This document shows positions 11,883-40,647 of a DNA stretch of 64,000 nucleotides, piece by piece. Origin of the DNA: Setoptus koraiensis. Taxonomy: Eukaryota; Animalia; Arthropoda. The notes under the pieces were generated by a model. That model was not told where the DNA came from. It saw nothing but the letters and a program-made list of their open reading frames with translations, and searched no databases. The number at the start of each line of letters is the position of its first letter. Within the stretch, counting starts at the first letter, position 1. The translations under genes were made by a program, and so were the position numbers. Location of the stretch: the NCBI GenBank assembly GCA_048013815.1, contig CM106586.1, positions 7,812,001 to 7,876,000 of the forward strand, read 5' to 3'.

Positions 11883-13788
11883 CTGCCAGCAACTGACCTA
11901 GGAAATCGGCCAGTTTAAATGGATAAAAGTTAAAATGCCCAGTGAATTGCATGCACATAAATTATAAGCGACCCCAACGGCTTATATATATATATATATA
12001 TATGGGCCGTTGCTGTATATATGTGAGCGGGCCTGAATATACAAGCAATCGTGCCTAGAATAGATAAATGAGCTTTAGCCAATGTGACGACCCGGACTAA
12101 AAAGGCCCACCATCATCATTCATTTTATTTTCTTTTTTCACTCTAATCATGTTGTACTCGCTTCTCCTCGCTATACATACACACCCCCGCACTCTAGTCA
12201 TTGCTCTCATCTTCTCTATGTACATGTCTATTTTCTTGGTCTATCCATTTATCCGGCCGGCGCCTCAAATGGCGGCAATAGCAGCAACAGAGAGGTCGCT
12301 GCTTTTATTATTATCATCATGAACAGATGCAAATCAAACAATGATAATGCCCCGCTAATAGAGAAAGTTGAATAGTCTGCAAGTTTAGATTTGACCAACA
12401 AACTCAATTGTTAGACTAGCTAGCTGGGGCTCTTTAATGGTTCTGGCCGGAGAGTGTTTAGTTGGTGTCCTGTTGGTTTTGTGTTGTGTCTGAAAGTGTT
12501 GTTTTGGGCCCTGAATTCATTGCACGTGCTGGGGCAATTTCAACAAACAACAAAAAAACGATCGTCGTCTTGTTGAGGCAATAACATCAGCACACAATAA
12601 GATTATTAGTAATAGTTATTACAATAAAAGATAATAATATAACAAAAAATAAATAGATAGATAGACGGACAAATGGAGGAGGGATCTCTCAAGAGAGCGA
12701 GAGACAAGAGAGGAGATAATTCAAGTGCAATAGGAAGATAGCACGAGCAACAACGTCATTGGTGCTATTGATTGTCACCAGTTTCTCTTGTGTACAGTTG
12801 TTACAGTGGTGATGTCACAACAACAACGACAAGCAATTTCACGACTTATCTAGCTTTGCAACATCTAGACAGGCGAACCAGGCGGCCAGAGATAGCTGAT
12901 GATAATCAATTGTGTAACATGTTAAGAAATGGTCGATCACTGGCCGGTACAACATAATGTCAACTGTAAAAAGGTCAGTCGCTATCTGACAAGTGTCGAT
13001 CAATTTGATAGTTTGTTGGCAGTGTGTCCGATAGCGACAACGTGATCACAGGCGACCCATCCATTCATGATCGATAATGAGTAGTTACCGAAGTGGAGAA
13101 CAAGAGCCACGAAGAAAGATAATAAAGAGAAACAAGATAAACTAACAAACGTTGCTCGTAATTAACAGCGATAATAAACAGTGTATTTTGATTATAATTC
13201 CGGTCGCCCCTCTATCTATTGCCACAATTGCAGCACCAATTGTTATCGCGAATGACGATGGTGAACGAACACTGAACGACGAGAAGATCCAGAGCAAGTT
13301 GTTAGCAATTGAAAATGAATTGTTCAAGCGAGGCGAGATAATGCCATAATGCTCTATTGACGGCCACAGTCTTCGATCTATATAGCAAGACTATTAGTAG
13401 TGTGGCTTGATACAGCCGCACGATAGCGCCACCGGCGTTGGCGTTGGCGGCTCATTTGGCCAGCTCTCTCAATAATTGAAACAGGGATTCTGGTCGTTGT
13501 GTAACAACATAAGCCTGCGTTCTGGTACTACATGGTTACGTAATAGTTTTATTTGTTGTATTAGAAACGCGGACAACAGCACCAACAACAACAACACTCT
13601 TGTGTATTTATTGTATGTGTAGCAACGGTAATGCACCGAGTTATAAGCCTCTACACTTGATGTAAGGTAGTGGGCACAACTTGTTCAATTGTGCACAACC
13701 CAACTTGTTTGTCACACCAATAATGGCCACTAGGTGGCCCAGGTGTCTTTGGCAAAATGGTTGGCTTGCATGGCGAGTATTGCATGGC

Positions 13789-13790
<2 letters not shown>

Positions 13791-13824
<34 letters not shown>
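13791..13824. repeat. (GA)n microsatellite (GAGA-type tract)
   Basis: Pure AG run. Confidence 0.93.
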
Positions 13825-13826
<2 letters not shown>

Positions 13827-14416
13827 TGAGGAAATATGCGCAATTGGCGAGATTGGCGAGATTGGCAAGATTGAGGGCGCCGCGCATTGGATGCTATGGC
13901 TATAATAAGTGATTCAAGGTAAACAAACAAACAAAAGAATATACCGCATTCAAATTTAATGTGTGTGTGTATATATAGTTGAAATAGGTTTTATTATTGT
14001 GGCGATAGCGATAGTGCGCCAGCGAGCGAGCGAGTTAGGTATGCCCAGCAAGAGCAAGAGCAATAGCACGAGCAACAACAACAACAACAACAACATCAGC
14101 AACAACGACAACAATAACATTTATTCTTTATATACGCTGCCAGCTACTACTGTCATCTGTTCGTCTCGTCTCGTTTCGTTTCTTTCGAAGCTTCTTGTCG
14201 GCACTCACACGGGCTCGCCGAGTCGTCGTCGGCGGCTCGCCATCGCATGCCGTTGCATTCGATTTGGACCCATGCTACCCATATCGTATCATTTCATTTC
14301 ATCTCTTATCCGTGGGCTCCATTGGCTCGCTGGCCAGGCCAGGCCAGGCCAGCGCTTGCTAGCTTGGGCCCAATGGCAGGCTGGTCGGGCTGGCTAGGCT
14401 ACCTTTGGCACTGTGG

Positions 14417-14504
14417 GCATTACGCTAACAGCATTACGCAAGCGGCATTACGCAAGCAGCATTACGCAAGCCGCATTACGCAAGCCGCATTACGCAAGCA
14501 GCAT
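14417..14504. repeat. Tandem array, 14-bp unit GCATTACGCAAGCN x5 plus one variant
   Basis: Units start at 14431, 14445, 14459, 14473, 14487. Confidence 0.93.
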
Positions 14505-15464
14505 GGACCCATAAAGCACATAATGTATAATGATAGTAGCAGTGTTTGTTGAGATAGCGAGAGAGTCTTATTTTTCGGTAGGCTACCGCAGCGCCAGCGC
14601 ATAGCGAGATAGTAGCGAGATTTGGCCCAGCTGACAACGGTTGCGAGCCGGCCGAATGGCACCAATTCGACAATGCAAACAATCATTACGGCTGTACATC
14701 CAAAATATATCTGCGGCCGGCCGACAATCCAAGCAGCCAGCTAGGCAGCCAGCCAGCCAGCCAGCCAACGAGCTAGCCAGCCAGCGAGCCAGTCAGCCAA
14801 CGAATCAGGGAGCCAGTGGCGAAATAAGAATGGGACGATTGAGTAAAGTATTGAAAATACCACTTTTGCTTATCCTCGGCCTACACACGCCGGGCCACAA
14901 TTGATTTGGCTCCATTGGATAAAGAATGACAGACAGTGCGCGAGGGCACATATTGGGACACATCGCGCAGACACACAATTTGATTTAATGTGCCATCTAT
15001 TTAAGCTCATCATCTATATTGGGGCGCCTCTTCTCCGCCGCGTGATGCTCGCCCCTTTTCACACACACAACTCTTACGTAACTGAGAGTTACGTAACGCA
15101 ACCTTCATATTATGATATAACCACCATGTGCTCATGTTATTACAATGGCTCGCTATTTGTTGATATAAACAGCAAGCGGGCGGGCGTCAGAATGGACGCC
15201 AATGGGCGCTCGCAATTTGCAGATTGTGGCGCGTATTGTGGGGCCGCGGCGCGCAATGGCGCAGTGTGCGCGGCGAAAAAACGACCAAACAACGAGAGAA
15301 TAACTGATGATAATATCAGTTGTGACCAGACGAGATTAAATCAGATTGGATTGGGGGCCGCGGCCGGGACGGCCCGGCCCGGCCGATCGCGGTCTGCCGC
15401 TCGCTGGCACCGCGCGGCGCTTGGGCCCGATGGCCGCGAGCACGCAGCGGTGAGGGGCGACTCG

Positions 15465-15598
15465 GTGCGTCATTGCGTCGTTGCGTCATTGCGTCGTTGC
15501 GTCGTTGCGTCGTTGCGTCGTTGCACCGGTGAGTCGTTGCGTCGGTGAGTCGTTGCGTCGGTGAGTCGTTGCGTCGGTGAGTCGTTGCGTCGGTGAGA
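15465..15598. repeat. Compound array: 8-bp (TTGCGTCR)n followed by 16-bp (GTGAGTCGTTGCGTCG) x4
   Basis: Read directly; 16-bp units start at 15529, 15545, 15561, 15577. Confidence 0.92.
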
Positions 15599-18500
15599 GG
15601 GTGGCCAGCGGGCCAGATGGAGCCAGCGGATAGTGAGCAGGCAAAGTCGTTAGCTGCTGTGATTTGCTTATCAAGCAGCCAGCGACAAGTGCGTGCAAGT
15701 CGGGCCAGCGGGCCGGCCTTACCTTGGGCTGGCGCTGGCGACTTTGGGGCCGCGCTCGCAAATAGCATCAGCGCAAAAGTAATCAGCGCGGCTCGCCGAG
15801 CCCCACTTACCTGTGCCGCGGTGATAGCAGTGTGTTATGTGTGTCTATTATGCATGTTTGTATCTATGTTTGTGTGTGTGCAAGTGCGATTTTGATCAAC
15901 TTATGCTTATGCGCGCGATGTTCGCGCCGGCACAACACGACACAAGCAGCCACCATAAGGCACCACACAAAAACACAACCACTTGCCATATTGATGATGT
16001 AATATAGGCTAGAAAAGAGGGAGCAAGATTCATTAGTTAGATTCGGATTGAATAGAGTTATAGTTGCACTTTGCAGTGTCTGGCTGTGGCCGCGATAGTT
16101 GGGCCGCGATAGTTGGGGCGCGATAGCTGGGGCGCGATAGCTGGTGGGGCCGGGCATCGCCGGCAACAGCGCGGGTCCACTCAGAAAGCACTTAGACGGC
16201 GAGATTGTTGGCCTAAGACGAGGAGCGTCTATTAAGTTATGAGTGTCGGTATCGAATGGGAACATTTAGTCGGCACTACAACTAGAAAATGTAGAGCAAC
16301 TTGTTTCGCTCACTTGTTTGCAAGCTCGCTCGCCGGCCACACAGGTTGTAGTGTCTTGACGGTTGCATAACAGCGGCCGCCGACGACACCGGCCAGTCAC
16401 AGCGCCCACAAGCACAAGCGGCGACACGCCGACAAGCCACCAAAATAATAATAATAATAATAACGATAATAATAGTTATAGTAATAATGACCACGCCGGC
16501 CTCCATCAACACGTACTAAACTAACGACTATCACGTGCTTGTCGTCGATTCGCTCGTGGCGTTTCGCGTGCCACGCGCGTATGCGGCTTTGGTCACGAGC
16601 CACCAGCAGCGCACCACGAGCCACTAGCAGCGAGCCACTAGCAGCGAGCCACGAGCAGCGCGCCACGAGCAGCGTTGGTGAGCTCGTTGGCGAGCTCGTT
16701 GCCAGCGACGCGCCAAACAAAGCCCGCCAGCCAACTAAACTAGTTAACTGTTGTTGTTGTTGCTGCTGTTGCTGCTGCTGTCGTTGTTGTGCGCTGTTTA
16801 AGTGAGTGTGCCAAAGTCAACTGTATCTCGCCCACTGTGACTCACACTTGACTTGCCACAACAACGTGTATCGAGACGCACGAGCGAGACATCGGCGGCG
16901 AGCCAAATCTCGCTGCCTGGCGCGCGTTTTCTCCGCACGTCGCCGCCGAGACGCTCGCCGGGCCCGCTCGCCAGGCTCGGGCTGCTTGCGCGGGCTGGCT
17001 CCGCTTGTCGGGCCGGAGCCGCCGAAGCGACAGTCAAAAGTCGTCCCGTTCGCCAGCGCCGCGTCCGCCTGTCGGGCTGCCAAGATGGTGCCGCAATGCG
17101 TGTGTGTGTGTGTGTGCCTCACTGACAATTGCGAGCTTGCGGGCCAGTTCCGCAGTCGGCCGGCCGACGGGGCCGCTGCCAAAAAACAACTGGCTGCACT
17201 TTATTATGCGACGCCAGCGCCAAAGCGGGGCACGTCGCCCCAGTTAATATTGTCTGCATGTTAACGGGCGCCACCGCTTGAGCTCGCCGGGCCCCCGACA
17301 AACGGCCGACAAACGGCCGACAAACAGCCGACAAGCAGCCGACAAGCAGCCGACATACAGCCGACAAACAGCCAACAAACGTTCGAGTGCCAGCGACTGA
17401 CGCGCTCCGCTCAGCTGCTCGGCCGGCCAGTTGCCAATTAGCGTTCGCATGACAGCTGTTTTAGCCGAGCGAGTCTGGCGAGCAAAGAGATAAATAGAGA
17501 GATAAATAGAGCGAGATGCTGCTCGCAGACGCCGCCGCTCGGTGCGCTGCTGTCAATTGGGCGAGAGCGTCAGTTCACTATCGTTGCAGCAGTCTATTTT
17601 TAGCCGCTTTCAGGCCCCAAACGAACAACGACAAAACGAATCGATAATTGCTCAACAAGTTCCGCGGGCCCCTCGACGCTTTCGAGTCGACGCTATCGAG
17701 TCGACGCTATCGAGTCGACACTATCGACTCGATAATGTATATTGATAATGCTGCCGACAAATTGTGCAGTTCCGTTACTGGTTGCGCTGGCTGCCGTTGG
17801 CGAGGGCGTGCGAACGCTCACCTTTGCACGGCCAGAGATGATTTGGCAGATTTGGTTGGCGAGATAAACATTTACAACAACATTTGCATATGTCGCTGTG
17901 CTGCCGTTGGTGTGGCTGTTTTGTCGCTAGGCGCTTGTTGTCGCCGTTGCCACACACTGTATGGCACACACGCAGTAACTGTAGCCAACACACAGTTACT
18001 GCGTATGCCAACGGTGAACTGTAATGCAGCTTGACGTAATCACAGCGCTTGTGAGTCACAAGCGAGCGCGCCACACTGTGTGTGCAGTGGGCGCTGCAAG
18101 CGGGCGCCTCTATCGGCCGCTCAGCGGCACTAACAAATGAAATAGGACTCAATGACACAACAGCAAAAATAGTTGCTGTCCCATGTACGCACGTAATGCA
18201 CGTTACGTAATACTCATGCTTGTAATGGTTATCAAAAGTGAAATGTCTTTTTTACTAGCGCCCAGTGCTGGCGATCTAATGGTATATTGGCCCCGTCCCA
18301 AAGGCTGCACTGCGACTGGCATTGTGCGGGCCTTGTCGGGCCTCTCCATCCGATTGCAATTGCGTTCCAGCGACGGCCGGCACGGGATTGGACCGAGCGG
18401 GGCCCCGTTGCTTGTGGTGCGGATAAGCGGGCTAAGCGGGCTGTACGTTGCGAGCGGGCTTTGTTGTTGGCGAGCCGGGCAGCGGTTGGCGTGTTTGCGT

Positions 18501-20559
18501 GCGGCCGATTGGGGCCCGTTGCAATGTGGCAAAAATCAGCAGCGGCAGCAGCGGCACTGTTATGATAATAATGGCAAAATAAAGATAGGAAAAGAGATTT
18601 GTGTTTAGCGCGCGCACAGTGACAAATAACAGTGCAACGGGCCAGTAATGACACTTGTAACTTACGACAACAACAACGGCGCCAACAACAACAGCGGCAC
18701 CGGCAACAACAACAGCAACAACAGCAGCAGCAGCAGCAACAACAACTACGACTACAACGACTACAACGGCAACAACGGCAACGACGACATTACTGGACGA
18801 CTCTTGATCATTGTCGGTCGCTCATTGTTGTCGCGCCGTCGAGCTCGTTGAGGCGAGCCAGCCGAATGATGCAACAATAATAACGGCGGGCCAGCCTTGA
18901 CTGACTGACTGGCTCGGCAATGGTGCATTAAGTACATAGAGCGAGAGGGAGAAAAGTGGAGAGCAAAGTAAAATAAATTATGACTTTACAACCGGCCAAC
19001 ATACAACGACCACCACAAATGACCCTGCTGCCGCTGCCGCTGCTGCTGTTAGTTAGCTCGCCACGATCATCATCGTTTTGGGCCGCCATGGCGCACCATT
19101 TGTCTACAACAACAATGACCGACGAGTCTCGTCTGACGCAAGCACAAACACAAACTCACCCGTTATAATTGCTGGCGCCGGCGCCGCCACCGCTTTATAA
19201 CGGCTGCTTTATAACGGCAAATCTGGCAGCATTGTCTGCCAGATTTGTGTCCAGATTTTACAGCAAATGCAGCAGTTGGCCCCCCCCCCCCGCTAATTGG
19301 AGTGACTTACAGCAAATAAATCGTCAAGCGTTAAATAACAAGCGCTTGTACGAGCGCATGCGAGTTAGTTAATGCCGGCGAGCTTGCCAGTTTGACAGCG
19401 CCCATGATACAGCAAGCAATGAAGTAATGACGCGATGACGCAACAACCACACCGAGTGTCATTGTGGCCGGCTGGTCGGTGCGATATGGCCGAGCGCTGG
19501 CATTGTCACAACTTGTGACTCACAAGTCGGTATCGCAAATTGGGCTCGATTGGCAATTGTGTCACACAATTTGTGTGTGCGTCAATTGTCATTGTGGGCC
19601 GTCTTAATTATGCACACACACACACACACACACACACAATTATTAGCCTTATTTAATAATGATAATAATGCTGTCGCTGCAATTGAGTCGTCGTCCAGTT
19701 AATATATTAATATGACGCGCGTTATGTGTCACATTATTAATAGCGAGCGGCACAGTAGAGGCACAATTTGTTCATCTGCACATTTGGTTGTCGCCCATTC
19801 GCACATGTCCGCACATGTCCGCACATGCCTAGATATATCTGGATACGGCGAGATATCTGTGCACGCTCACAAGCCAGATAGCACCGGATAGCGCCATATA
19901 GCACAATATACAGGCCGCACAGGCCGCACTGGTAACCAGTGACTGGTTGCACCAGCGAGCTGCCAGCATTACAGCAAACAGCCGATATTACATCATTACG
20001 TCATATCGTGTCAGCGTGCGACTGTGGTCACTGGCATGTGCCAGCGCCCAATCGCACAACAAATGCCACAAGGCTGACCACGCACACTGGCCAGCGCGAA
20101 TGGCCAGTGCCAAAATAACGACAACGCACACAAATGGGCAAACGCATAAATTGGTATAAATTCAGGCCAAACTGAGGCCGGTTTAACTGGCAAGCAGTGG
20201 TCAAGCGTGATTGCACTTGTTTCGGTTTTGGTCCATTTGTGATGTATGTGTGATCCATGTGTGATCTATGTGTGATTGTGTGCTGGCGCGGGCGCGGGCG
20301 CCGGCACATGATTGAATGGGGCCGACTAATGAGCCATCATGCTGCATATGATTGCGTAACTCAATTAAATTAATCATGTGTTCGCCTCTCTGACACACTC
20401 TGCCTGTCAGCTGACTAGAATCGCTGGCCACAGGCTGTCAGGCGAGCACAGTGGCGCCATGTTGAGACACAAACACAATCGACATTTGATGATAAACAAT
20501 CAAATACAAATGATGATATGGCCCATAACTTGTGGCCGACACTACACTTATCACACCCA

Positions 20560-20590
<31 letters not shown>

Positions 20591-20630
20591 ACAGTGTCAC
20601 AACAGACACACTATTATTATCGCTGGACAC

Positions 20631-20668
<38 letters not shown>

Positions 20669-21389
20669 GGGTCGCGAACGGAGCTAGGCGCGCCGTTTTG
20701 TCGCTGTTGCCACTTGCAAGTCGCTATGCGCTCACCACGCTGACCATAGTGTGTCTAATAGCGCCACACAGCGGCCAGCCGCCTGTTATGGCTGCTGGAC
20801 ATAAACATTATTTATTGTTGTTCACACAGTTGTCACTTGTCTATGCGCGTCACTGGGCCCCCTTTATCATATATCTTTCTGCCTGTCCCGCCGGCCCGTC
20901 GTTCCGCTATCCCCGCCGGCCCGTCGTTCCGTGATACCGCCAGCCCGCTGGCCCAAGGCTGACAAGCCCACTGGCCCGACGGCCCGATGGCTGACAAGCC
21001 CACAGGCTCGCCAGTGCGCTGTCGGCCAGTGTGACTGGCTGTGGCTCGACAATCGCGTTTTGAGTTGCGCAATGCGACTCGGCCGCGACTTGGCATCGCG
21101 CGGCCAACGGCTCGACAAGCAGCTCGACATGCAAACTTAAAACACTTTATGCTGCTCACAAATAGCCGAATAGCCGCAACAACAGTCGCAGTTGCTTCAG
21201 TCGTTGTTTGCAGTTTGCTCAGATGGCGTCACTATCTCGATCTCGCTGCTAGCTCAACTAACTCACTTATTAACAGTTATCGTTTGATTACATTGCGCAA
21301 GAGAGAGAGAAAATATTTTCATTGTCGGGCACGGACTCAACTGAATTGGAATCATCAAGCGAAAGCCAGTCAAAAGCCAGCAAAAGCAA

Positions 21390-21557
21390 TCAGTCAGTCA
21401 GAATCGCATCAAACGACCAGGCAAACGATCCGACAAACAATTGTTGACAAACCAAGCCAAAGACAACAAAAACACTGTTGGTCAGAGAGGACACTCCAAA
21501 AACAAGCGACCGCACAACCAACGAATACAACAGCTCAACGCGCAACTTCCATTCAAG
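21390..21557 (+). other. Candidate non-coding first exon (Inr-like TCAGTC to AAG|GTGAGT donor), possibly of calmodulin
   Basis: Inr-like TCAGTC at 21390, A/C-rich ATG-free stretch, consensus donor at 21558. Confidence 0.3.
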
Positions 21558-24458
21558 GTGAGTACTGGCCAGTTTGTTCGAATTGGGGCCACTTGATTCG
21601 GCCTCTTCGTCCGATCGAGTTGGCCGCCGACAACCAGTTTTTAGCCGGCGTGTTTTTGTTAGTTTTTGTTCGGCGTGGATAATTCACGCCGAATTGACGC
21701 GCCAGCGTCATCGTGAGCCAACTGTGAGCCGGCCGAACAATTGCCAGCGAATACCAGTCGGCTGGCTGGTGTGGCCGCGCTCGTGGGCCCGGCGCATCTG
21801 GCCGCCAGATTCTGGCGAGCGACTCGTCGCCGTTCGCCGACGCCCGGCTCCGCGGGTCGCCAGCGTCGCCCGTGTCGCCGACGCCGAAAGAAACGTCTGG
21901 CCGCGCGGGTGATCAGCGCCGTCGAAGGAGTTATGATAATTGGTTCCGCTCGAACGGTGCCGATGGCTGGCCCCTGTGCGCTAACAAGTGTGCGCTGACA
22001 GCGCGCGTTGCGTAATTGTCAACTGACACAAACAGGTGTCGCGGGCCCCAATCTAATTGAAATTTAAACTTTTCGTCTGTTCGTTTTCTGCTCTGCCAAC
22101 TGTGTCTTGTGTGTTGCTCTTGTGTGTCGACACAAACAACGCCAAGCAAACAAAGAGCGCCACACAAATAGATGCCTATCTGGCCGTGATCCGTTCGCAT
22201 TGATTCATTCAAATTGAAAATCCCCCGTTTCCGTTTTGTCCGTTTTATCCGTTTTGTTCGTTTTATCCGTTTTGTTCGTTTGCAAGCGGCGGTGCGAGCG
22301 CCACCTGCGCATCATTATCGCGCCCATGCTGGCGATAACGGTGAATAGTATCGGTGTAGCATTGAGCCACTTATTTCTATTGTATTATCGCTGCCTTGTA
22401 ACTGTTACATAACTGTGCGGCTGTATAAAACTGTGTGGATGTATATAACTGTGTGGCTGTATACAAGTGGCTGCCGAATCACGCTGCATTGTTAACTCAC
22501 ATAAGTGACCTGTCTGTCGCTCGGCGGGCCCCATCGAACAATATTCGTGGGGCCCGCAAGCGGCCAATATTGGCATGGTGAATTGGGAGTATCAAATGGG
22601 AGTGTTCATGCCCAACTTGATATTATCAACTTGATAATACCAAGCTCATAATGGCAAACACGCCGGGCACGCACAGTGCAGAGGCTCAATTTAGATCTGA
22701 GCAGATACACGCGCTGTAAAATAAGTGGGGCCCGAGCAGTGGCTAATAATATATTTTAATATATTTTAATTTGGCATATATTTTAACTTGTGCCCGCTTC
22801 AATGTCGACAAATGCCCCGAGTGGGCCGATATGCGAGCTTTAGTGTGCGCCCATTATTATGCTATGTGGCCCACATACAAGAATGTGTAATGTGGCTCGC
22901 ATGCAAGAATATATATTTAAATGTGTGCGTATTTAAATCTGGCCGCGTTCTCATTGAAGCGAGACGTTTATAGTTGGGGCCAAGTCGACGAGTAATGTGA
23001 TTGAAGTTGTTGCCAAGAAAAAGCCAAAAATAAACCCTAAGCTCGCTGGCCCAATTCGTGTGTGTGTGCGGCCAGTTACACACTTAAATTGGCCAACTAT
23101 TTGAGATTTAGATTTGCACCAACGTTACGTAATTGTCTGGCTGTGTGTATCTGTTACGACTGTGTGGCCGGCGCGGCGCAACGCGGCCTTGTCTTGCCAG
23201 CTCGGCTGGCTGGCTTGCTATATCAGTGATATAATATCACTGATGTAATATCAGTGGCTCAAGTGGCGAGACTGCACAGTGCCGATGGGCACACAAGCCG
23301 AGTCATTTTGTTAGGTCTGTAGGTGCCCTTTATCCATGCACTTATCCGTGGGGCCCCGCAACTGGGCCACTTGCCAACTGGCTGCCGGCGGCTGGGACCG
23401 GGGCCCCATACGCCGAGCTGGCTGCCGTTAGTTCATTAGAGTGCCAGTTGGGTAGTTGCGAGTCGCAACTCGCGACTTGCCAGTCACAACTTGCGACTCG
23501 CGATACTCTCACAGCGAGCCAAGTGTCAGCCAGTGTCTTCATTTTGCTCGCCGGCTCGGTGTTATTGTGTGTGTGTGTGTGTTATTATTTGTCGCAGTCT
23601 AGCCAAGTCGACACGGCGCACTCTAGTCGATATAGTCTAGCCAAATAAGTCTAGCCGAGCTGGCTGAGGCTCGCAGCCGACGACAGTCTAGGTGGATCAG
23701 ACTAAACCAGTGGCGTCGCCCTAGCAGCGAGCCACTATCAATCGGGATCGTTTAGGGGCCCGGCAGTGGTGCACAACAATGCGCCACAGCTCATGATATT
23801 AATCTCCGTGGCGCCGCTGTGACGCCGCAACGCAAGACTTGGATGCACTCCAATGACACCGCCTGAAAAGTTGCCCAATCGGCCCCATATCCAGCCAGCA
23901 AATTAGCTCGGCCCGATATTGCCAGTGGGGCCCGGTGTTGCCAGTGGGGCCCGTGTTGCCGCTCGTCTGGCTGCTCGGGGCTGGCTGGGCGCTTCGAAGC
24001 CGAGCAGCCGAGCATCGAATATTGCCGATGCATCGAAATATTTGCACTTGGCATGTCGCGCGACGCGACAAGCCCATCCGACAAGCGCACCCATATAAAT
24101 CGCAAGCCGGCCGTCTTTCGGCGAGCACATGGCGCCATCTTCGGGTCCCGGAGCTCGCGCTGGCGCTAGCCCGAGTGGGACCGGCCGCGACACCGGAACA
24201 TACGCAATATTGACGCCGTATCTTGACAAAAAAAGCCAGCGTCGAGGTGCCAATTTCGTCGCCAGCTTGATGCAGACTTGCGCGGGCCAATTTTGCGCGA
24301 GATGGTGGTGTGCCCAGCCACCACGTTGTGCCAGTGTCCCGACGAGTTGTCCGACCAGTCGCAAGTTGTCGGCGGCACCGCACTTGGGGCAGCGTATTAG
24401 GGCCCGATGTAGGCCTCCAGTGCGTCGGCTAATGGGGCGCCGCCGCGCCGGCCTCTCA

Positions 24459-24526
24459 CTGTGAGAGTCTCACAAGCTGTGAGAGTCTCACAAGCTGTGA
24501 GAGTCTCACAAGCTGTGAGTCACAAC
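24459..24526. repeat. Tandem array, 18-bp unit CTGTGAGAGTCTCACAAG x3, each internally palindromic
   Basis: Units at 24459, 24477, 24495. Confidence 0.93.

Positions 24527-26529: not shown

Positions 26530-26530
<1 letters not shown>

Positions 26531-26589
<59 letters not shown>
26531..26589. repeat. (CA)n microsatellite
   Basis: Pure CA run. Confidence 0.96.
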
Positions 26590-26590
<1 letters not shown>

Positions 26591-29288: not shown

Positions 29289-29355
29289 CCGGCTCAGGCT
29301 AAACTGGCTCAGGCTAAACTGGCTCAGGCTAAACTGGCTCAGGCTGAACTGGCTC
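29289..29355 (+). repeat. 15-bp tandem array (CTGGCTCAGGCTRAA)n, inverted partner of 30279-30332
   Basis: About four units read directly. Confidence 0.9.
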
Positions 29356-30278: not shown

Positions 30279-30332
30279 TTTAGCCAGTTCAGCCTGAGCC
30301 AGTTGGGCCTGAGCCAGTTCAGCCTGAGCCGG
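30279..30332 (-). repeat. 15-bp tandem array, reverse complement of the 29289-29355 array
   Basis: agccagttcagcctgagccagttgggcctgagccagttcagcctgagcc. Confidence 0.88.
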
Positions 30333-30985
30333 CGCTTTGGGGCCCCAGCGGCCAGCCGAGTGAGCAAACTGTAAACGAGGCGAGCGACTTGCTCCTTTGG
30401 CTGGGCCAGTTGTTTGCAGTGTTATATGGCATGTTTAGGCAGAGAGGTGCCTCTCAGCGACAAGGCCACAAAAACAATCTGCACACACGCACACGCACGC
30501 CGACAGGCAGAGCGTCGGACAAACACGAGCGGCGCCAGTTGGGCCCCACAACTAGTTAGGCCACATACAGCGAGAGCAGTTGGCCCAAATACAATCGCCC
30601 AATGATAAGCCGGGCGAGCACGCGACGGCAAACAAAGAGCGCGCTCTTTGTTTGGCCATTGTTTGTCCGCGCTGACCAGCGCCGGCCAAAACAACAGCAA
30701 CAACCCACCCAACAGCCAAGCCAACAACCGAGCCAACAACCGAGCCAACAACCGAGCCAACAGCAACAACCGGCTGCATCGGCGCTGGCAAGACGCTCGC
30801 CGAGACCGTCCAGTGTCCAGCAGACGGGCCCAGGGGCCCAGAGGCGAGCTCTTGTGGCCGCGGCCAGAGTGAATGAACCGCTGATTGGGGAGAACAATGG
30901 GATGAATAAAAGTGCAACAGCAAGTGAGCAACCTCAAGTCCGCTCCACTCCGGCCCGACTCTTGGCGAGCCGTGCGCGGCCCCCT

Positions 30986-31092
30986 GGTCGCAACTCGGGG
31001 GTCGCAACTCGGGGGTCGCAACTCGGGGGTCGCAACTCGGGGGTCGCAACTCGGGGGTCGCAACTCGGGAGTCGCAACTCGGGAGTCGCAAC
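30986..31092. repeat. Tandem array, 14-bp unit GTCGCAACTCGGGR x7.6
   Basis: Units every 14 bp from 30986. Confidence 0.95.
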
Positions 31093-33941
31093 TTGCGAGC
31101 GAGTCGCCACCGGCGAGAGGACGTGTCCAGGGTGAAATCAGCTCGCCCGGCCATTGTGGTTAGCTCGGGGCAATGACGCAACACCGGGGCGCGTATCGAG
31201 CTGGCCGCCAGCCGTTGAGCCAGCGACAATGGCTGTTGTTGTTGTTTGCTATTTGTTGTTTGCCGTTGGTTGTTTGTCGCTTATTGTTTGTCGTTTGTTG
31301 TTGTTGTTGTTGTCGTTGTTGTTGTTGGCGTCGTTGCAACGGCGACACAGCGCCAACCAGCATCGCCATTGATTAATTGAACGGGGGCGCAAACTTGATT
31401 ATCACCGGGGCCAGCTCGTTGGCCGGCGCGCCCACCAAGACGCACTGTGTTGCCGACCGACATGTCGGCCTCGCTTAGTTTGCAAATGTCCGCTGCGGGT
31501 CTCCCGCTCAATGTCACCCCAGCACACACAGACACAATTAAGCGACAGCTGCAATCAAGGTCTCGCCGTTGTTATTATGCCGTCTTGACTGGCTTGTGGT
31601 TGGCGTTGGCGCCGTTGCTGTCGTTGCGGAATGGCCGCCGACGACAACAACACCGACAACATCACCGACAGCGACAACAGCGACAACAGCGACAACAGTG
31701 ACAACAGCGACAACAGCGACAACAGCGACAAAAAGCGATAAAAAACGACGAAAAGCGACGAAAAGCGGCACCACCACCACGACATCTCGAGCACGTCGAG
31801 CAAAGCCATAAATCATCACCATCCCCATATATCACCACACAAGTGGCTGCGATACGGCGATGGTTACATTGACACAATGCGGCATCGGCTCGATGCCAGC
31901 GTGCTCTATGCTGCAACAGTGCAAAAGTGTTTCCGGTGACCTTGACAGCTAATCAAATATTAATAAAAGCTCGTATGATACTGATAATTATTTCTGCAAT
32001 AGTATCAATGGGTGCGTATGCGCCAATTGAGCCGCGGCCGCATTAATACAAGCACTATCAATATTGATATTTGGCGGCCCGTTCACTTGGCCCGAACGAG
32101 CGAGCCAGCCGACGGACTCAATCGGTTGGGGGCGCATTTCGAGCTGGGCCAGCATCGATTGGCCCCAATTGCAAAGCTGGCGAGTGGCCAGGTGAGGCCG
32201 GCCGCCAGGTGAGGCCGGCGGTCAGGCGAAACGGCGAGAGGCCGAGAACGGCGAGAGGCCGAGAACGGCGAGAGGGCTGAAAATAATAAATAAATAATTC
32301 ATTCGAGTCAGCTACACTGCATGCGGCGATACAATGTGCAAGCTCATGTTTGGCAAGCTCGTGTTTGTCATTACACTAATGACCAGCGCTGGCACGGTGC
32401 TCTATATTTGTCATGCTGGCAGCTACAGCTGACAAATTTGAGAGCGAGTGGCCCAATTGGCCAGCACGGGCTCGCATCATATGTTTGGTCGATCATATGT
32501 GATCACATGATCAAAACAAACAAACATGACGCAACTATCGTTGCCGTTATTGTGCACGACGGATAGCCGACTTGCCAGATAGGAAGCCAAGTAAGTGTTT
32601 AATGTGTGCTGACAATTGCTGAAATTTGACACAACACAGATGACGCAACACACACACACACGACGACAACTGATACTTGACACTGCAACTGCCAATGTAA
32701 CTACCAGCAACTAACAGCGCTAACCCTGTACACAGCGAGCCGGATATTAGACAATGATACAATTGATTATGGCTGTGCAAACTGTGCTTTACTGTGCTCT
32801 CATACTATGAGACTCATAGTGTGTGTGTGTGTGTGTGTGCGCGCGTTAGCGACAAGTGAACAATACCGGAAATGGCAGTAGTGACGCGCGGCAACCTATG
32901 CTCGTGAATGCGCGCGATTGCATCATCTGCGCGCAGACCAGATATCGCTTCATGTTTGTGTGTTTGTTTGCTTGTTTGTTTGTTTATTTGTTTGTTTGCC
33001 TGTTTGCTTGTTTGTTTGTCTGTTTGGCCGAGCAGACGAACGTTGTGAGGCAGCAAAAACTGGCCAGTTGTCGCAAAGAGCAAACAACTGACAAGTGTGC
33101 GACAAGTGCACTCGCAACACAACAACTCATCACTGATTCCAGGTGACCAGTCGGCCGGCCAACCGGCCATAATGTGACCGTTAGTTCCATGGGGCGACTT
33201 GATAAATCGCTGAGCGATTTTACAGCCGATTCAATTGGCGAGTTGTTGCGTTGTTGCTCATTTCAATTGTTTCGTCATCGCATGCCGCTCACATCCGGCC
33301 AATAAGTGAGCCAGCCGGCAAGCGAGTTATCATTGCCACTGCCAATAATATGCCAATGACATGCCAACGATATGCCAATGGAGGCCCCAAGGAGGAGAAA
33401 TGGGCCGACAGCGGCATCGGTGCAGCACAAGCGTGGGCCATGCGCTGTTACGTAACGTCGCGAGCAGTGAGTTGGGCGCCGGCCATTATTAAATGGCTTT
33501 AAGCTGATTAATGGTGATCAACAAAACGTCTAGCAGCGTTTAGCTGTACAGGCTGCAGTGTGTAGCCGGGCCCATAACTTGAGGGCATTTTGGGTAGCAC
33601 CACGGGGTACATTGTTTGCATATTGCATGAATGAATAGATACGGTATATTCATTCATATACATGAGCACGTGAATGAACGTGCTGGCTACCTTCGGGCTC
33701 TACCCAATGGGCGCCTAGTATGGAGCTCGGTATTGATTATGTATGCCACACATCATGTGTGACATAATCATGGTATGCCCCTCACAATATGCGCAGGCTG
33801 GTATTAACAAGATTAGGGTTAAATAGGTTAATTTAACTAATAACCCGATAAATGTCGATTGGCGTCGCTGAGTGCCCGCTAACTACCTTCAAACATGCTC
33901 TGTGTGTCTGTGTGTCTGCCTGTTTGTCACCCCGGAGCCCT

Positions 33942-34057
33942 CGGTACTAGCGAGTCGGTACTAGCGAGTCGGTACTAGCGAGTCGGTACTAGCGAGCCGG
34001 TACTAGCGAGCCGGTACTAGCGAGTCGGTACTAGCGAGCCGGTACTAGCGAGCCGGT
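33942..34057. repeat. Tandem array, 14-bp unit CGGTACTAGCGAGY x8
   Basis: Units every 14 bp from 33942. Confidence 0.95.
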
Positions 34058-37000
34058 CATGTACCGAGTAGCCCGTCATATAGCCAGTTGCGTTGTTTAG
34101 TCGACTAGTTGGCCCGTTGAGCAATTGAGCAGTAGGTGCTGGCGTTGCCGCTGGGGGCCGGCGCAGGCCAGGCGCCCATCCAAAACAGCAACAACGCAAA
34201 TAATAATAATAATCATATCATCTTGAGCGGCGCCAATTAACACTAGCCAGCGGCGGCTTAATTGGCGCTCGGAGGGCCCCACTAGCACTGGTTAGGCACG
34301 TCAATAGTGTGTGTGTGTGTGTGTTGAGTCAATAGTTTAAGTCAATATGCGACAATTATACAACGACAGCGACAATCGGCCAATAAACGGCGCCCGAATT
34401 ACGTAACTGGTGCGGCATAACTTGCATTGTCAACGACCAGTCAATGACGATGACAATACCGAAACATGTGCTCACAACAACAACAGCAACAGCAACAACA
34501 ACAGCAACAGCAACAATAGCAACAACGACCGTATAATAACAAGCGCACAGCCAGTTCAAGTGAACTACTTGAGCTTGCTTGTGTCATCATCATTTATTGA
34601 GCTGTTATGCGAATTAATGAGTGGGGCCAGCTCACTTACTTGTTAGTCAAGTGCTTGCAACAAGCCAAATTAAAAAGGTAACCAACATGACATAATAATA
34701 TACTGTGTGCCTTACCGGTGTCGTCCAGTTGTGCTGACGACAGTTGTGCTGACAGCAGTTGTGAGTGCAGCGTTGAGAGAGCGGCCCCAGGAGAAAGTGA
34801 GCCAAATTAGGTCACACTAACAGCAGTAATGATCTCGAGACGATTAACAAAAAGACGCTAACGGCCGGCCAATGTAACTATGCCACATTACACTGCGCCG
34901 TGCAAAGGGGGCGCCCCGTCTGCGAGGCTCCGGCCAACAAACTGCGTCTACCTGGCTGCAGCAACAACAACGACGACAACAGCCACAGCTAGGCAACACG
35001 CAGCAGCAAAGAAACACAAAGCACACTATTCACGATTAATCTTGACACAATAAACGGCAACAGCGACAACAGCAACAACAACAACAACAAAGGCAACAAA
35101 AACAACGGAAAGAACAAACATCAACTAGATAAAAACGCTGTTACGCAACAACAAAAGCAAACAACGTTGCGCAAAGTTTATGGCACAGCGAGCAACTTTA
35201 TACCAAATTAAACTTTGCACTCTCCAGTGTCTTGTGAGCCAGAAGTTGAGCTGCTCCAGTGTCACTGTGTGCTATTTGCTATTTTGTTGTGCGCATTTAT
35301 GCACGCGCCCCTGTCGCTATAGTCTCCGCTGCGCCCTGCAGAGACCATAGCGACTGCAGAGACTATAGCGACTGCAGCGAGCGCGCCCATTATAGCCGCG
35401 CACGTCGCCACTCGAACGGGGCACAACAAGAACGGGGCGCCTTGTTGCGCCTCGTCCTCGTCGTGCCCATTCGGGCTTGTGGCGTCTTGTCGGTGCGTCG
35501 GCCCGTTGCGTTGACCCCACAGCCACAGATAGCCTAGCCACACCATGCACCTTTGTGTGTGAAGAGAGCGCCACGAGCGCCCCCTGGTCGCCGCCGGTCG
35601 GCGCACCGGTCCCCGCTGGCCCATTGGCCCCACGGGCCCGCTGCACCCACTGGCCCCATTGGCACCTATTGATACAATCAAGGCGAGCTAATGAGATAAA
35701 TAAATAGATGCGCGAGGCATTTGGTGCGTTTTATTTATTTCCATGTGTGCCGATCATCGGGTCCCGGTGCGCGGGCCGCGCGCGACCAACAATCAAACAG
35801 CTAGCTGGCCAGCTCTGTGTGTGTGTGTGTTCAGATTAAGCTGTTATATTGCATAAGCATAACTTTCGCCTGGTTAGCTTCGATGGGGCCCACACAAGAC
35901 TCATTTGCTTTAGTTTATGCATCTCGGCTCGTTGCTGGGCATGGCTCGCTGAGTGCACTCGCTTTGGCTAGCTGGCTCGCCGTTTCGCTGGCTCGCTGTC
36001 TGGCTGCTGGCTGCTGGCAAGTCACAAGCAGGGCTCGTTGGCACGGGCACGTGTTACAGCTTCGAGCCGGGGGCCAGCCAGCGGCCAGCGACCAGATGCC
36101 ATAGAGTGACAATTTGACTATTAGTTATGGGGCGCCGCCAACGCCAAGCGCACTGTGCGCGCAAACAACTATCACTGGTCAGTTATTGCCACGGCGCGCT
36201 GTGCGCTGGCCAAACGCACAGTTACGTAACGTGCTCGCGGTGCGCAGTATGCACACTTCCACATGAGCGCCCCGTTGAGGAATGGGGGCGCCCCGGCAGC
36301 GATAAAAATAGCAAACGTATCACATGCATGAATGTGACGGTGATTAAATAGAGCAAGCGGCGGACAGGCGCTCCGTTGGCGACATCTTGCCGCAACAACG
36401 ACAACAACACAGCACCGCCGCCGACAGCGCCACCAACGACGCCGGCCACATCAATAGCAGCAACGCCAGCCGCGGCGGAGGCGGAGGCAACAACGCCACC
36501 GACACCGGCGCCGGCAACATCACCGGCGGTGATGGCTTGTCACCTTCATTGGACTGGACACGCCATTGGGGCCGCGCGGCGCGCTGTGTTTATTACGGGC
36601 TGTTGTGCGGCGGCCAGCGCGCGCGCCCCACGATTAAATTGAACCGACGATAAAAAGAGGCCAGCCAGCGGACAAATTTGCGGGGCCGACATTGACTGGT
36701 GGCGAGCACGCAAATAAACTCGACTGGGCGCATGCCGACACTGACCGGGCCGGCGCTGGCGCCGGCGCGACCAACTGTCAGCGGCCGGGCCGCCCGCTGG
36801 CCGCCGACGGGCCGCTGACAGTGCCCTGGGTGCCCGGAGCCGGCCGACGGCGCCAGCCATTTTAATAAATTAAAGCCCGCCAGCGCACACTCGTGTCCGC
36901 TCGCACTATCTTACATGACACAAATGGGGCCCGCTCTGGCGGCCATATTATTATTGGGGGGGGGGGGCCAGTAGCGGTGGCGGTGGTAGTTGCAGGGGCG

Positions 37001-38224
37001 GCAGTTGCAGTTGCGCGCCGCATTATTAGCGGTATTAGCCTGTCAGCGTTGTTATGCAACACGCAGACCGACAGACAGACACACACACGAAATGAGGGGG
37101 CCGGGGCCAGAGTGCGCAATTGTGCAAAGCGGAGCAGCGAGCGCCGGCACTAATAAAGTAACTTTGGCGCACTCATACTCTGCAAAGACAAAAGATGGCC
37201 GACAAGACAAAGAGAGATGGGGATCAATTTCGACATGCCGCTCTCTAAGTTATCATTATTGTCTCTGCGCGCCGTGCAGCCGCTCAGCCGGCTCGCCAGG
37301 TCTGACTGACGGCTCGCGGGGGCCCGCAAACGCACATATATTATTAATAGCTAATGAACATGAGCCTGGCTGCGCCATTGTTTGGCTTGCGCGACTGGCG
37401 GGCCGACTCGGGCGCCGCTGAGTCGACCGGCGAGCGCGCCGACCAGCCGACGCGGGCGGCCGCCGAGCCCAACGTCGCAATTGGAACGGATTCGGCGCTG
37501 CAGCGCATTACTGTTATTATTACCGCTGCCAGCGCTATTACCGTTATTGGCGTGGCCGTTGCCGATGCTGTTATTATCATAATAAGTCGCTGGCCCGCTC
37601 AATCGCCCGCCTAGGCGAGCTCGCTTTGCATCGCTCCTCGGCGATCGGCCGTCTTGAGCGGCCCGACACACGGCGGCCCGACACACGGGGCCCGACTCAC
37701 GGCGGCCCGACACACAGGCGGTCCGATGGCGCCAGCAGAGCTAGCAAATGGAGATATATGAGCGGCCATTTATGCGAGACACACCGGCGCGCGCTTGTTG
37801 TGGCGCCGTGCTGCCACAACAAGCCTGTCGTATAAGCCTGTGCGAGCCTGCAAGTGGCACCCGTGGGCCGCTCCGCGCCCTGGCGGGCGCGCCGCACACT
37901 TGGGGCGCCGCCAGTGGCACAGTTTGACGGGGCCAGCCGGCGGAGCCAACTGGCCGCACGGCGCGCCAAGCGAGCGCCGGGCGAGCCGCATAGCGCGCGA
38001 GGGGTCAGCCCGAGCCAATAGTGTACATAATGTGCCGATTGTGTGCAGGGGGAATCGGGGGGACCAGAGAGAGAGAGAGAGAGAGAGAGAGTTGCGTAAC
38101 CACGATTTGGAATGGCCAGGCGCTACGTGATTGGTGCCACGGGACTAATGCGCCGCTAGGTGGCTGGAGCGCGAACGCGCAAGTCGCATAGGGGCGCCGC
38201 GCACACACACTGCACGCAGCACAC

Positions 38225-38227
<3 letters not shown>

Positions 38228-38306
<79 letters not shown>
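38228..38306. repeat. (CA)n microsatellite
   Basis: Pure CA run. Confidence 0.96.
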
Positions 38307-38309
<3 letters not shown>

Positions 38310-38748
38310 CGCATAGCACACAGAGGCAAGCGCAGACGGGCGGGCAGAGCGAGCGAGAACAGCGAAAGCGCGAGCCAAAGCGAGAAAGTAGCACGTGCCG
38401 CAATGCGGCCCTACTCGTCGCACTGGCTGCCGGCGCCAAGTTTGAACCCGTCCGGCCGGACGGGGTTCCCGTCCGAGCGGCACAAGCTGACCGACGGTGC
38501 GCCGCACGCCGAGACATGCGATGCGGCAATCGCGCGCTGGACCTAGCGCCGCGAGCACACTGGCCGCTATGCAACGAGCGCGCCACGTACTCGCGTGGCC
38601 GCCGAGTGTGGCGCGCTGTGGACGCCGCACAAACACACAAACAGAGGGGCGAAAGTCCAATTAAGCAGCTCGCATCTTGTGCCCACATTAAAAGCTTATG
38701 CATTAATATTGCGCGTCACAAGCTGCGCATCCTTGATGGCCGACAGTT

Positions 38749-38790
<42 letters not shown>

Positions 38791-40593
38791 CAACACTTGG
38801 GCGACTTACGAGCGACACATATCATCATTACACGAGTGTGTGTATCATTATGTCCGCGCGCTGGCTGCAGCGAGCCCGCCCGACGATTATCCAAACACAC
38901 ACCCTGGCCGGAATGCAGCCAGGGTGTGGATCGGCGGTCCCGATTGGCGGCGTCCGCACTGGCCCCGCTGCCCACGTCAGCGATGGTCGCCGCGGCGCTG
39001 TGTTTGTTTGTCTTGGCTGGCCGCTCACTGGGTCACCGGGCCGCCAGCGGATGTGTGGCGGCCGACAGAAGGAGAGAGAGAGAGCGAAAATAGCAACTAT
39101 TGTGTTGCGTTGTTTTTGCGCGCTGTTGAGACCAGACGCGCACGAACGGCGGCCCCATCTGGCCAGCGATTCATTTATTTATGCTGGGCCAGGCTTCGTC
39201 TCGCGCGCGGCGCGGCGCGATCTGCCGCACGGGGGCCGCCAAAAGGACAGCGCCGGCCGCTCACCTGGCAACTGGTCCGGCCCGCCCGCCCGCTCTCTCG
39301 CTGGCTGTCTGGCTGGCGTGCACTCGCCGTGGGTGTGGGTGCTCGGCTGACTCGGGTCACAATTACGTCAGATTACGAGCGACGATAATTGTTGATCGCC
39401 CTCTCGGCTGTTTTGGCTCTGGCTCGTGCTTGCGCGTGCACGCGCGTGCTGCATGTAGCGCTGCATACGTGCAAGGCGCGCGTTCAGGTGCAGGGAACAG
39501 CAGTGTACGCACAGCAGTGCTGCGCGCTGGCAAGCTACTGACGGTGCGCAGACAGATGTCGCAAGTGTGATTATGACATCCGCATTAGCATTGCGCGTCT
39601 TGACAACCGAACTCGCCATTGGGCCGACAGTGTTCGACGTGCACTGCTCGACGAACTGTGCGACTCGCACAGTACCAGCGCCAGAGCGAGCAAATTACAT
39701 AATTTGCTCGCTCGCCACGATGCGCTCGCCATGGTGCGCTCGCCCCGCATAGCAGGTTGCGCAACTACCCATGGCAGCCACAACTTGTGCGATGCTGGCA
39801 TGGGTAGCGCCAACGGCATACGCTGTTGCTGTCCGGGCTGAAGAGCGCCAGAAGCAATGCAAATGCAAAGTCGCAATGGCGATACCAAGCGATTGATTGA
39901 TTGCGACGGCTGGCCTTTGCCAGTGCTCACAGGTATTGTCAGAGCTCGGCCGGCTTTTGTTTTTGGGCGCTCGCAGTTTTGATGAGGTGTCATAATGGCG
40001 GCAGTGTCGTCATTTAAACAGCAGTCACTGTTGAACAGAGCAGGTGCATCGGGCCACTGTTGTTGCTGCTCGCTTTGCACTGCTGATCGATTGGCCTTTA
40101 CATTCGGAGGCATGTATTATGGCATTGTTCAGGATTTCGAGTGAGTCTCTTCACAATTCACATTGAGTGACTGCTGCAAGTTAATGGCCGGCCTTGTTCA
40201 TGAAAACTTTCCCTGACTAAACTCTGTGCGAGAGCTTTCAAAAAAGCGCGCCCAAAGTGCGTTGCGCAACGTCTCTAACGCGGTGCATGTAGTCAATGTC
40301 TAGACGCTGTTACGTAACTCACTGCTGCCATAACACATTGCTGCCTTTTGGCCACGGTAGCAGCGCAGTGATGATAATGATGATGATGACGAGCAGCAGC
40401 GGCCGCGGCCGCGCCAATAGTAATAGTGGTAATAATAGCGATCATGGTAATAGTGATGATAACGCAGCGAGTTGTTGTTGTTGTAGTTGTTGTGGTTGGC
40501 GCCGTTGTTGTTGCGCTATCACGGTGCTAGCTGCTCACAGTGGCGCTGCTGTATTGATGATGGTGCAGTGGTTGATTATGATGGAGCTGCCAT

Positions 40594-40594
<1 letters not shown>

Positions 40595-40647
<53 letters not shown>
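40595..40647. repeat. (CA)n microsatellite
   Basis: Pure CA run. Confidence 0.96.

What the first reader, a model, noticed from the sequence alone, without database searches (positions are those of the whole stretch)
13535..40318. About 20-fold excess of perfect PAR-bZIP/Vrille-type sites upstream of calmodulin
Seen: at least nine TTACGTAA cores (10-mers at 13535, 15073, 15088, 18202, 23124, 33447, 34398, 36221, 40309), eight with full RTTACGTAAY flanks. There are also TTATGTAA variants (22404, 28029, 39694) and several TTGCGTAA/TTGCGCAA C/EBP-type sites. About 0.45 copies are expected in 29.5 kb at uniform base composition; I saw only one elsewhere in the window (46740, a splice junction). 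Established: RTTAYGTAAY is bound by PAR-bZIP (Pdp1/DBP/HLF) and Vrille/NFIL3, clock output factors. Inference: a distributed homotypic enhancer system, possibly giving rhythmic or stress control of calmodulin.
Basis: partly seen in the sequence, partly recalled or inferred. Interest (0 to 1): 0.7.

Follow-up and report, generated by a model that had tools for sequence, protein, structure and literature searches.

The report
bZIP palindrome excess in mite non-coding block
A 29-kb gene-free, GC-rich stretch between an innexin gene and the calmodulin gene of a gall mite holds nine perfect copies of TTACGTAA, a binding word for one family of gene-regulating proteins, where less than one is expected. 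First readers noted the same excess in many other non-coding stretches of this genome, so it says little about calmodulin or daily rhythms in particular.

Summary
TTACGTAA occurs 10 times in the window (0.95 expected), and 9 copies lie in 13536-40317. That stretch is a 29-kb block of 50-63% G+C with no detectable gene, where Markov and local-composition models expect 0.06-0.31 copies.

Three points argue for real sites of a PAR/NFIL3(Vrille)/C-EBP-class bZIP dimer:
- It is the top non-repetitive 8-mer and by far the most enriched 8-mer palindrome.
- The sites sit in unrelated, unique contexts, and 17 of 18 half-site flanks are Y (RTTACGTAAY).
- The only one-mismatch variants present are bZIP half-site swaps.

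- The block lies between divergent innexin (-) and intronless calmodulin (+) genes, so the target gene is unassigned.
- Sites are about 3 kb apart, so this is not a classical homotypic cluster.
- Ten insect calmodulin loci show no excess.
- A related gall mite lacks per, tim, cry and Pdp1 and keeps vrille, so clock output is doubtful.
- The scan had already noted the same excess on other DNA: at least 18 other notes on long non-coding domains of this genome (AI notes, one followed up).

Conservation and expression could not be tested. Interest is moderate.

The parts
13001..41900 (.). GC-rich (50-63%), gene-free block rich in micro- and minisatellites. It is part of the 8406-41936 intergenic gap between innexin and calmodulin.
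   Evidence: Composition. 15% is masked as tandem repeat against 3% outside. CpG o/e is 0.97-1.17. Twenty ORFs tested had no Pfam match reaching its gathering score. ORFs overlap in all frames. No Rfam family.
13536..13543 (.). TTACGTAA site (GTTACGTAAT)
15074..15096 (.). Pair of TTACGTAA sites 15 bp apart (CTTACGTAAC and GTTACGTAAC)
18203..18210 (.). TTACGTAA site (GTTACGTAAT)
23125..23132 (.). TTACGTAA site (GTTACGTAAT)
33448..33455 (.). TTACGTAA site (GTTACGTAAC)
34399..34406 (.). TTACGTAA site (ATTACGTAAC)
36222..36229 (.). TTACGTAA site (GTTACGTAAC)
40310..40317 (.). TTACGTAA site (GTTACGTAAC), 1.6 kb before the calmodulin ATG
22405..22412 (.). TTAYGTAA variant (TTACATAA). Two more lie at 28030-28037 and 39695-39702.
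14417..14504 (+). 14-bp minisatellite, each unit carrying the PAR/C-EBP hybrid word TTACGCAA (5 exact copies)
15462..15597 (-). 8/16-bp minisatellite built of CGACGCAA units; two units read TGACGCAA (one exact copy was counted, at 15481)
7302..8405 (-). Innexin (inx2-like) gene, transcribed away from the block
   Evidence: Pfam PF00876, E 1e-113; orthologues
41937..42386 (+). Intronless calmodulin ORF (149 aa, arthropod-type sequence)
41879..41909 (+). Two TATAAATA boxes in a duplicated 19-mer, 58 and 35 bp before the calmodulin ATG. This is the likely proximal promoter (inferred).
46740..46747 (+). The single TTACGTAA outside the block, at a probable exon/intron junction (TTAC|GTAAGT) of an ankyrin-repeat gene; conserved in the congener

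Best explanation
The nine TTACGTAA palindromes are most likely real, selectively kept, high-affinity binding sites for a dimer of a PAR/NFIL3(Vrille)- or C/EBP-class bZIP transcription factor. They are scattered at about one per 3 kb through a long intergenic regulatory domain between innexin and calmodulin. They seem to be one local sample of a genome-wide vocabulary of this mite's long GC-rich non-coding domains, not a device special to calmodulin. Shown here: the excess, the flank preference, the restriction of variants to bZIP half-site swaps, the independent unique contexts, and the absence of detectable genes in the block. Inferred: that a bZIP protein binds. Vrille is the best candidate, because a related gall mite keeps vrille and was reported to lack Pdp1, and because NFIL3 prefers TTACGTAA about 12-fold over TTATGTAA. 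Also inferred: that binding changes transcription of a neighbouring gene. Which gene, and in which direction, is open.
For: Nine copies are seen against 0.06-0.31 expected. After tandem-repeat masking, GTTACGTA and TTACGTAA remain the top non-simple 8-mers. TTACGTAA is the most enriched of the 256 8-mer palindromes (p 2.6e-17), and palindromes as a class are not enriched. Flanking bases are Y in 17 of 18 half-sites (p 7e-5). All 12 independent one-mismatch variants fall in the three bZIP-compatible classes TGACGTAA, TTGCGTAA and TTATGTAA (p 1e-5 to 3e-4), and the nine other classes are empty. The whole bZIP octamer family numbers 34-38 in the block against 4-7 expected, but 11 against 8 outside it. 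The word is 75% A+T inside a 52-63% G+C domain. No repeat family holds the sites and no flank motif is clearly shared; the best word, ACGCGG, is only borderline after correction for the words tested. CpG is not depleted, so the central CG is not decaying. From the literature, TTACGTAA is the consensus site of NFIL3, DBP, HLF and TEF, and C/EBP alpha and beta also bind it well (PMC10941009).
Against: There is no binding, expression or chromatin evidence. No RNA run was found, and the laid contigs gave nothing. Conservation could not be tested, because the congener's contigs stop at microsatellites and bait searches failed. The left edge of the intergenic gap, just before the GC-rich block, evolves fast: 62-64% identity to the congener against about 80% for non-coding DNA in the compact part. 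The domain spawns minisatellites built of similar words, so a non-selective origin is not excluded. A density of one site per 3 kb is low for an enhancer.
Confidence: 0.55

Rival explanations
1. The sites form a distributed homotypic enhancer through which clock-output factors (Pdp1/Vrille) give rhythmic or stress control specifically to calmodulin.
For: The word is the PAR-bZIP/Vrille consensus. The nearest gene on the right is calmodulin, with a site 1.6 kb before its ATG.
Against: The block is shared with a divergent innexin, and four sites lie nearer to it. Ten insect calmodulin loci have 6 sites against 8-11 expected. A. lycopersici lacks per, tim, cry and Pdp1. First-reader notes describe the same excess at AP-2, AhR, RhoGEF, receptor and other loci of this genome. 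The density here (0.31 per kb) is lower than the titles of some of those notes imply.
Confidence: 0.07
2. The excess is a neutral by-product of the sequence dynamics of these GC-rich, satellite-spawning domains. Slippage, micro-duplication or biased repair would seed and spread short words, with no protein reading them.
For: 15% of the block is tandem repeat. Arrays made of TTACGCAA and of CGACGCAA/TGACGCAA units sit beside the 15-bp pair of TTACGTAA. Another word, GGGCCCCA, is also about 10-fold enriched. The left edge of the intergenic gap diverges fast.
Against: Eight of the nine sites are solitary, in unrelated unique contexts. The variants follow bZIP grammar, not random decay. The flanks fit the protein consensus. 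An A+T-rich word is kept perfect in G+C-rich DNA.
Confidence: 0.18
3. The sites are bound, but not for gene-by-gene enhancer action. They would mark a class of long non-coding domains, as an architectural or boundary mark, a silencing mark, or a replication or recombination mark.
For: According to the scan notes, the excess is genome-wide and confined to long non-coding domains. Spacing across the whole block is fairly even and there is no clustering into modules.
Against: No PAR/C-EBP-class bZIP that I know of has such a role (my own knowledge). Nothing in the window tests it.
Confidence: 0.15
4. The sites are relics of a mobile element: its termini, target sites or excision footprints.
For: Palindromes with a TA..TA frame can arise as transposon footprints (my own knowledge).
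Against: No dispersed repeat family was found in the block. No flank motif is clearly shared; the best word is only borderline. Palindromes in general are not in excess.
Confidence: 0.03

Closest known systems
D-box / PAR-bZIP-NFIL3 (Vrille, Pdp1, Giant, DBP/HLF/TEF, E4BP4) binding site, RTTAYGTAAY
   Same: The core is identical, Y flanks hold in 17 of 18 half-sites, and C is preferred over T at the centre as for NFIL3.
   Different: Known D-boxes act as single sites or small groups in promoters and enhancers of clock-output or developmental genes. Here perfect sites are spread over 27 kb, and apparently over many domains of the genome. The clock's negative limb and Pdp1 were reported missing in a related gall mite.
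C/EBP and C/EBP-ATF/CRE hybrid sites (TTGCGCAA, TTGCGTAA, TGACGCAA)
   Same: These words are also enriched in the block: 6, 10 and 7 copies against 1.5-2.2, 0.6-1.6 and 1.2-1.9 expected. C/EBP alpha and beta bind TTACGTAA slightly better than their own reported consensus TTGCGCAA.
   Different: Their excess is far weaker than that of TTACGTAA, and half of the TTACGCAA copies are one minisatellite.
Genome-wide over-represented regulatory words of other arthropods (for example the DRE palindrome TATCGATA, or Zelda's CAGGTAG, in Drosophila; from my own knowledge)
   Same: A single short exact word is strongly over-represented in non-coding DNA of many loci.
   Different: Those words concentrate at promoters or early enhancers. 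This one is spread through long G+C-rich gene-free domains, and its reader is unknown.
Homotypic clusters of binding sites in developmental enhancers
   Same: There are several copies of one site near one locus.
   Different: Classical clusters hold several sites within a few hundred bp to 1-2 kb. Here mean spacing is 3.3 kb, with only one close pair.

Membership tests
PAR-bZIP/NFIL3 (D-box) binding site | Palindromic core TTAYGTAA | tested here: met
   Nine TTACGTAA and three TTAYGTAA (Y=T) copies in 13001-41900.
PAR-bZIP/NFIL3 (D-box) binding site | Flanks R at -1 and Y at +1 (RTTAYGTAAY) | tested here: met
   17 of 18 half-site flanks are Y, p 7e-5.
PAR-bZIP/NFIL3 (D-box) binding site | A PAR/NFIL3-class bZIP encoded in the same genome | not tested
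   No such gene lies in the window. A scan note with one follow-up mentions a vrille gene 4.3 Mb away. A. lycopersici has vrille but not Pdp1. I had no way to search this genome.
PAR-bZIP/NFIL3 (D-box) binding site | Binding by the factor, and an effect on transcription | not testable with these tools
   This needs EMSA or DAP-seq, ChIP and a reporter. No RNA run was found.
Circadian clock-output element | A working clock (per/tim or cry feedback) and a rhythmic target mRNA | not testable with these tools
   Literature on a related species reports per, tim, cry and Pdp1 as not found. No time-course data exist.
Homotypic site-cluster enhancer | Several sites within about 1-2 kb | tested here: not met
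   Gaps between successive sites are 1.5, 0.015, 3.1, 4.9, 10.3, 0.95, 1.8 and 4.1 kb. Only 14.4-15.6 kb holds a denser mix of bZIP-type words, partly as minisatellites.
Calmodulin-specific conserved cis-regulation | The excess is also present at calmodulin loci of other arthropods | tested here: not met
   Ten insect loci of 29-90 kb hold 6 sites against 7.7-11 expected. No eriophyoid calmodulin locus could be fetched.
Dispersed repeat or TE-derived motif | Sites embedded in copies of a common longer sequence | tested here: not met
   No dispersed family at 40 nt or more. No flank word is clearly shared after correction; ACGCGG is borderline.

The most novel reading that the evidence does not exclude
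In this streamlined gall-mite genome, TTACGTAA is the signature word of a whole class of long, G+C-rich, gene-free domains. A PAR-family bZIP left over from a dismantled circadian clock (Vrille), or C/EBP, has become a master reader of these domains and acts on chromatin at domain scale instead of through single enhancers.
Probability: 0.15. Interest if true: 0.65.

Novelty: new member of a known kind. Interest (0 to 1): 0.42.

Why it matters
Gall mites have the smallest arthropod genomes, with a median intergenic gap of about 0.5 kb in A. lycopersici. A 33-kb gene-free gap is therefore conspicuous, and what it holds hints at why it is kept. A perfect bZIP palindrome that is 30- to 150-fold enriched points to one transcription-factor class as a major reader of such domains. 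If the other notes of this scan hold, this recurs in many long non-coding domains. That gives a simple handle (one word, one small protein family) on how regulation is organised in an extremely reduced animal genome. It also raises the question of what Vrille does in a lineage that seems to have lost the core clock repressors. For calmodulin itself the finding says little.

Tried and rejected
1. Repeat or TE origin was rejected. There is no dispersed family and no clearly shared flank word.
2. Hidden genes in the block were not found. Twenty ORFs had no Pfam match reaching its gathering score, the two longest ATG ORFs translate to low-complexity junk, ORFs overlap in all frames, and there is no Rfam hit.
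3. A general palindrome excess was rejected.
4. An artefact of local A+T-rich pockets was rejected. The local-composition expectation is 0.26, and the 100 bp either side of the sites are 43-59% G+C.
5. The idea that the block is an ancestral innexin landscape was rejected. In F. setiger and two other eriophyoids the innexin orthologue has only 0.5-2.4 kb upstream and different neighbours.
6. The conservation test failed for lack of data:
   - The congener's contigs (L002, L013) end at microsatellites outside the block.
   - The exact-protein look-up of calmodulin returned only insects.
   - The metagenome scan returned short contigs (probably transcripts) with at most 82% CDS identity.
   - Two ORF baits from the block found nothing but low-complexity matches.
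7. Reads gave nothing on expression. No RNA run is on record; X5 is the same organism; X7, X9 and X10 gave only other organisms' calmodulin and simple-repeat matches.
9. The identity of the genome is not proven. It is a two-chromosome gall mite that turns up in runs of a second organism, which fits the unidentified eriophyoid assembled from Rhodamnia argentea data (PMC11879100).
Full report
**Observation.** The DNA search finds TTACGTAA ten times in the 64-kb window. Dinucleotide shuffles give a mean of 0.95 and a largest count of 4. The tenth is at 46740. Seven of the nine read GTTACGTAAY and eight read RTTACGTAAY.

**Setting.**
- From about 13 to 42 kb, G+C is 50-63% against 37-40% on both sides.
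- 15% of this block is micro- or minisatellite, against 3% outside.
- CpG is not depleted; o/e is 0.97-1.17.
- I found no gene in the block. Twenty ORFs gave no Pfam match that reaches its gathering score. The two longest ATG ORFs translate to junk. ORFs overlap in all six frames, as expected for stop-poor DNA. No Rfam family matches.
- On the left is an innexin gene on the minus strand (7302-8405; PF00876, E 1e-113).
- On the right is a complete, intronless calmodulin ORF on the plus strand (41937-42386). Two TATAAATA boxes lie 58 and 35 bp before its ATG.
- The block is therefore a divergent intergenic gap of about 33.5 kb.
- The scan's notes call this a gall-mite genome in two pieces. The median intergenic gap of the gall mite A. 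lycopersici is 538 bp (PMC7738191).

**Is it chance or composition?** For 13001-41900 the expected number is:
- 0.31, 0.28, 0.06 and 0.09 by Markov order 0 to 3;
- 0.26 when summed from local 500-bp tiles;
- 0.28, 0.06 and 0.09 in 300 simulated sequences per order, never above 3.

GTTACGTA and TTACGTAA remain the top non-simple 8-mers after tandem repeats are masked. Among all 256 palindromic 8-mers TTACGTAA stands alone (p 2.6e-17), and palindromes as a class are not enriched. All nine TACGTA hexamers of the block lie inside the octamer, while ACGT and CACGTG are if anything depleted.

**Is it a repeat?** No dispersed repeat family exists in the block. No flanking word is clearly shared by the sites: the best, ACGCGG, is seen at 4 of 8 loci and is only borderline once the number of words tested is counted. 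Apart from one pair 15 bp apart, the sites are solitary in unique sequence.

**Does it look like a protein's site?**
- The base outside each half-site is a pyrimidine in 17 of 18 cases (p 7e-5). That is the RTTAYGTAAY rule of PAR-bZIP proteins (established knowledge).
- Only three of the twelve one-mismatch classes occur: TGACGTAA (3), TTGCGTAA/TTACGCAA (10, five of them in one minisatellite) and TTATGTAA (3).
- These three classes are exactly the swaps between PAR, C/EBP and CRE half-sites and the D-box Y position. The other nine classes are empty.
- The chance that all 12 independent variants fall there is 1e-5 to 3e-4.
- The whole family of bZIP octamers numbers 34-38 in the block against 4-7 expected, but 11 against 8 outside it.
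- A structural and ITC study shows that TTACGTAA is the shared site of NFIL3, DBP, HLF and TEF. NFIL3 binds TTATGTAA about 12-fold less well, and C/EBP alpha and beta bind TTACGTAA slightly better than TTGCGCAA (PMC10941009).

I conclude that real bZIP sites are the best reading, with confidence 0.55. Binding itself is inferred.

**Is it about calmodulin?**
- The sites span the whole gap. The left four are 5-10 kb from the innexin ATG and 24-28 kb from calmodulin.
- Ten insect calmodulin loci fetched by the identical protein (29-90 kb each) hold 6 copies against 7.7-11 expected.
- The block is not an old innexin landscape either. In Fragariocoptes setiger and two other eriophyoids the innexin orthologue has only 0.5-2.4 kb upstream and other neighbours.
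- 74 kb of compact DNA from four other eriophyoid species holds 3 copies against 1.0 expected.

**Is it about the clock?** In A. lycopersici, vrille, Clock and cycle were found. period, timeless, cryptochrome and Pdp1-epsilon were not (PMC7738191). If that holds here, a PAR activator/repressor clock output is unlikely. Vrille (or C/EBP or Giant) acting outside a clock is the more likely reader.

**Is it special to this locus?**
- The scan found this before on other DNA. At least 18 other first-reader notes on this genome report the same excess in other long non-coding domains: AP-2, AhR introns, RhoGEF, a 14.5-kb gene-free block with 18 sites, and others.
- One note says the excess is 'confined to the two long non-coding domains' of its window.
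- One follow-up reports a 60- to 100-fold excess in the introns of a receptor gene, and mentions a vrille gene on this chromosome.
- These are AI notes and I could not count the genome myself.

**What could not be done.**
- Conservation. A congener (run SRR33593474) is 87% identical in and around innexin/PKC and about 80% across the compact region next to calmodulin. It is only 62-64% identical at the left edge of the gap (8.3-9.8 kb), just before the GC-rich block. Its contigs stop at microsatellites before any site.
- A metagenome scan for calmodulin gave only short contigs (probably transcripts) with at most 82% CDS identity.
- Two ORF baits from the block found nothing useful.
- Expression. 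No RNA run holds the stretch, and the laid contigs showed only the same organism or other organisms' calmodulin.

**Verdict.** The reading as PAR/NFIL3/C-EBP-type bZIP sites is reasonable. The reading as a calmodulin-directed, clock-driven homotypic enhancer is not supported. Any wider value lies in the apparently genome-wide pattern, which needs a whole-genome count and a binding test.

Noticed in passing
window 18510-36932 (26 copies); one more at 47153: A second dispersed word, GGGCCCCA/TGGGGCCC, occurs 26 times in the block in unique contexts, against about 2.5 expected and one copy outside. Two copies are the full palindrome TGGGGCCCCA (27297, 30338).
   Followed up: partly
window 14417-14504 and 15462-15597: These two minisatellites have units that are bZIP-like words: ATTACGCAAG with period 14, and CGACGCAA (two units TGACGCAA) with period 8/16. 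They flank the close pair of TTACGTAA at 15074/15089. Slippage may be creating or amplifying binding-site arrays.
   Followed up: partly
window 14417-41293: Thirteen minisatellites of unrelated sequence share a 14-bp period (starts 14417, 16083, 16617, 17673, 19192, 23220, 25008, 28298, 30986, 31239, 33941, 39709, 41260). Period 14 is the most common in the block.
   Followed up: no
window 29289-29358 and 30278-30332: Two 15-bp-unit minisatellites form a 92% complementary inverted pair about 0.9 kb apart.
   Followed up: no
window 41937-42386 and 41860-41936: The calmodulin ORF is complete and intronless, whereas insect calmodulin genes span 9-70 kb. A 19-mer with a TATA box is duplicated just before the ATG.
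   Followed up: partly
window 8333-9800 versus L002:943-2300: The left edge of the intergenic gap, just before the GC-rich block, is only 62-64% identical to the congener. Non-coding plus coding DNA of the compact region (window 42767-50382 versus L013) is about 80% identical, so the long gap evolves faster than the compact part.
   Followed up: partly
L016:5036: In another eriophyoid (Logan run SRR33927463) a single ATTACGTAAC lies about 0.8 kb upstream of the innexin orthologue, in a 1.1-kb intergenic gap.
   Followed up: no
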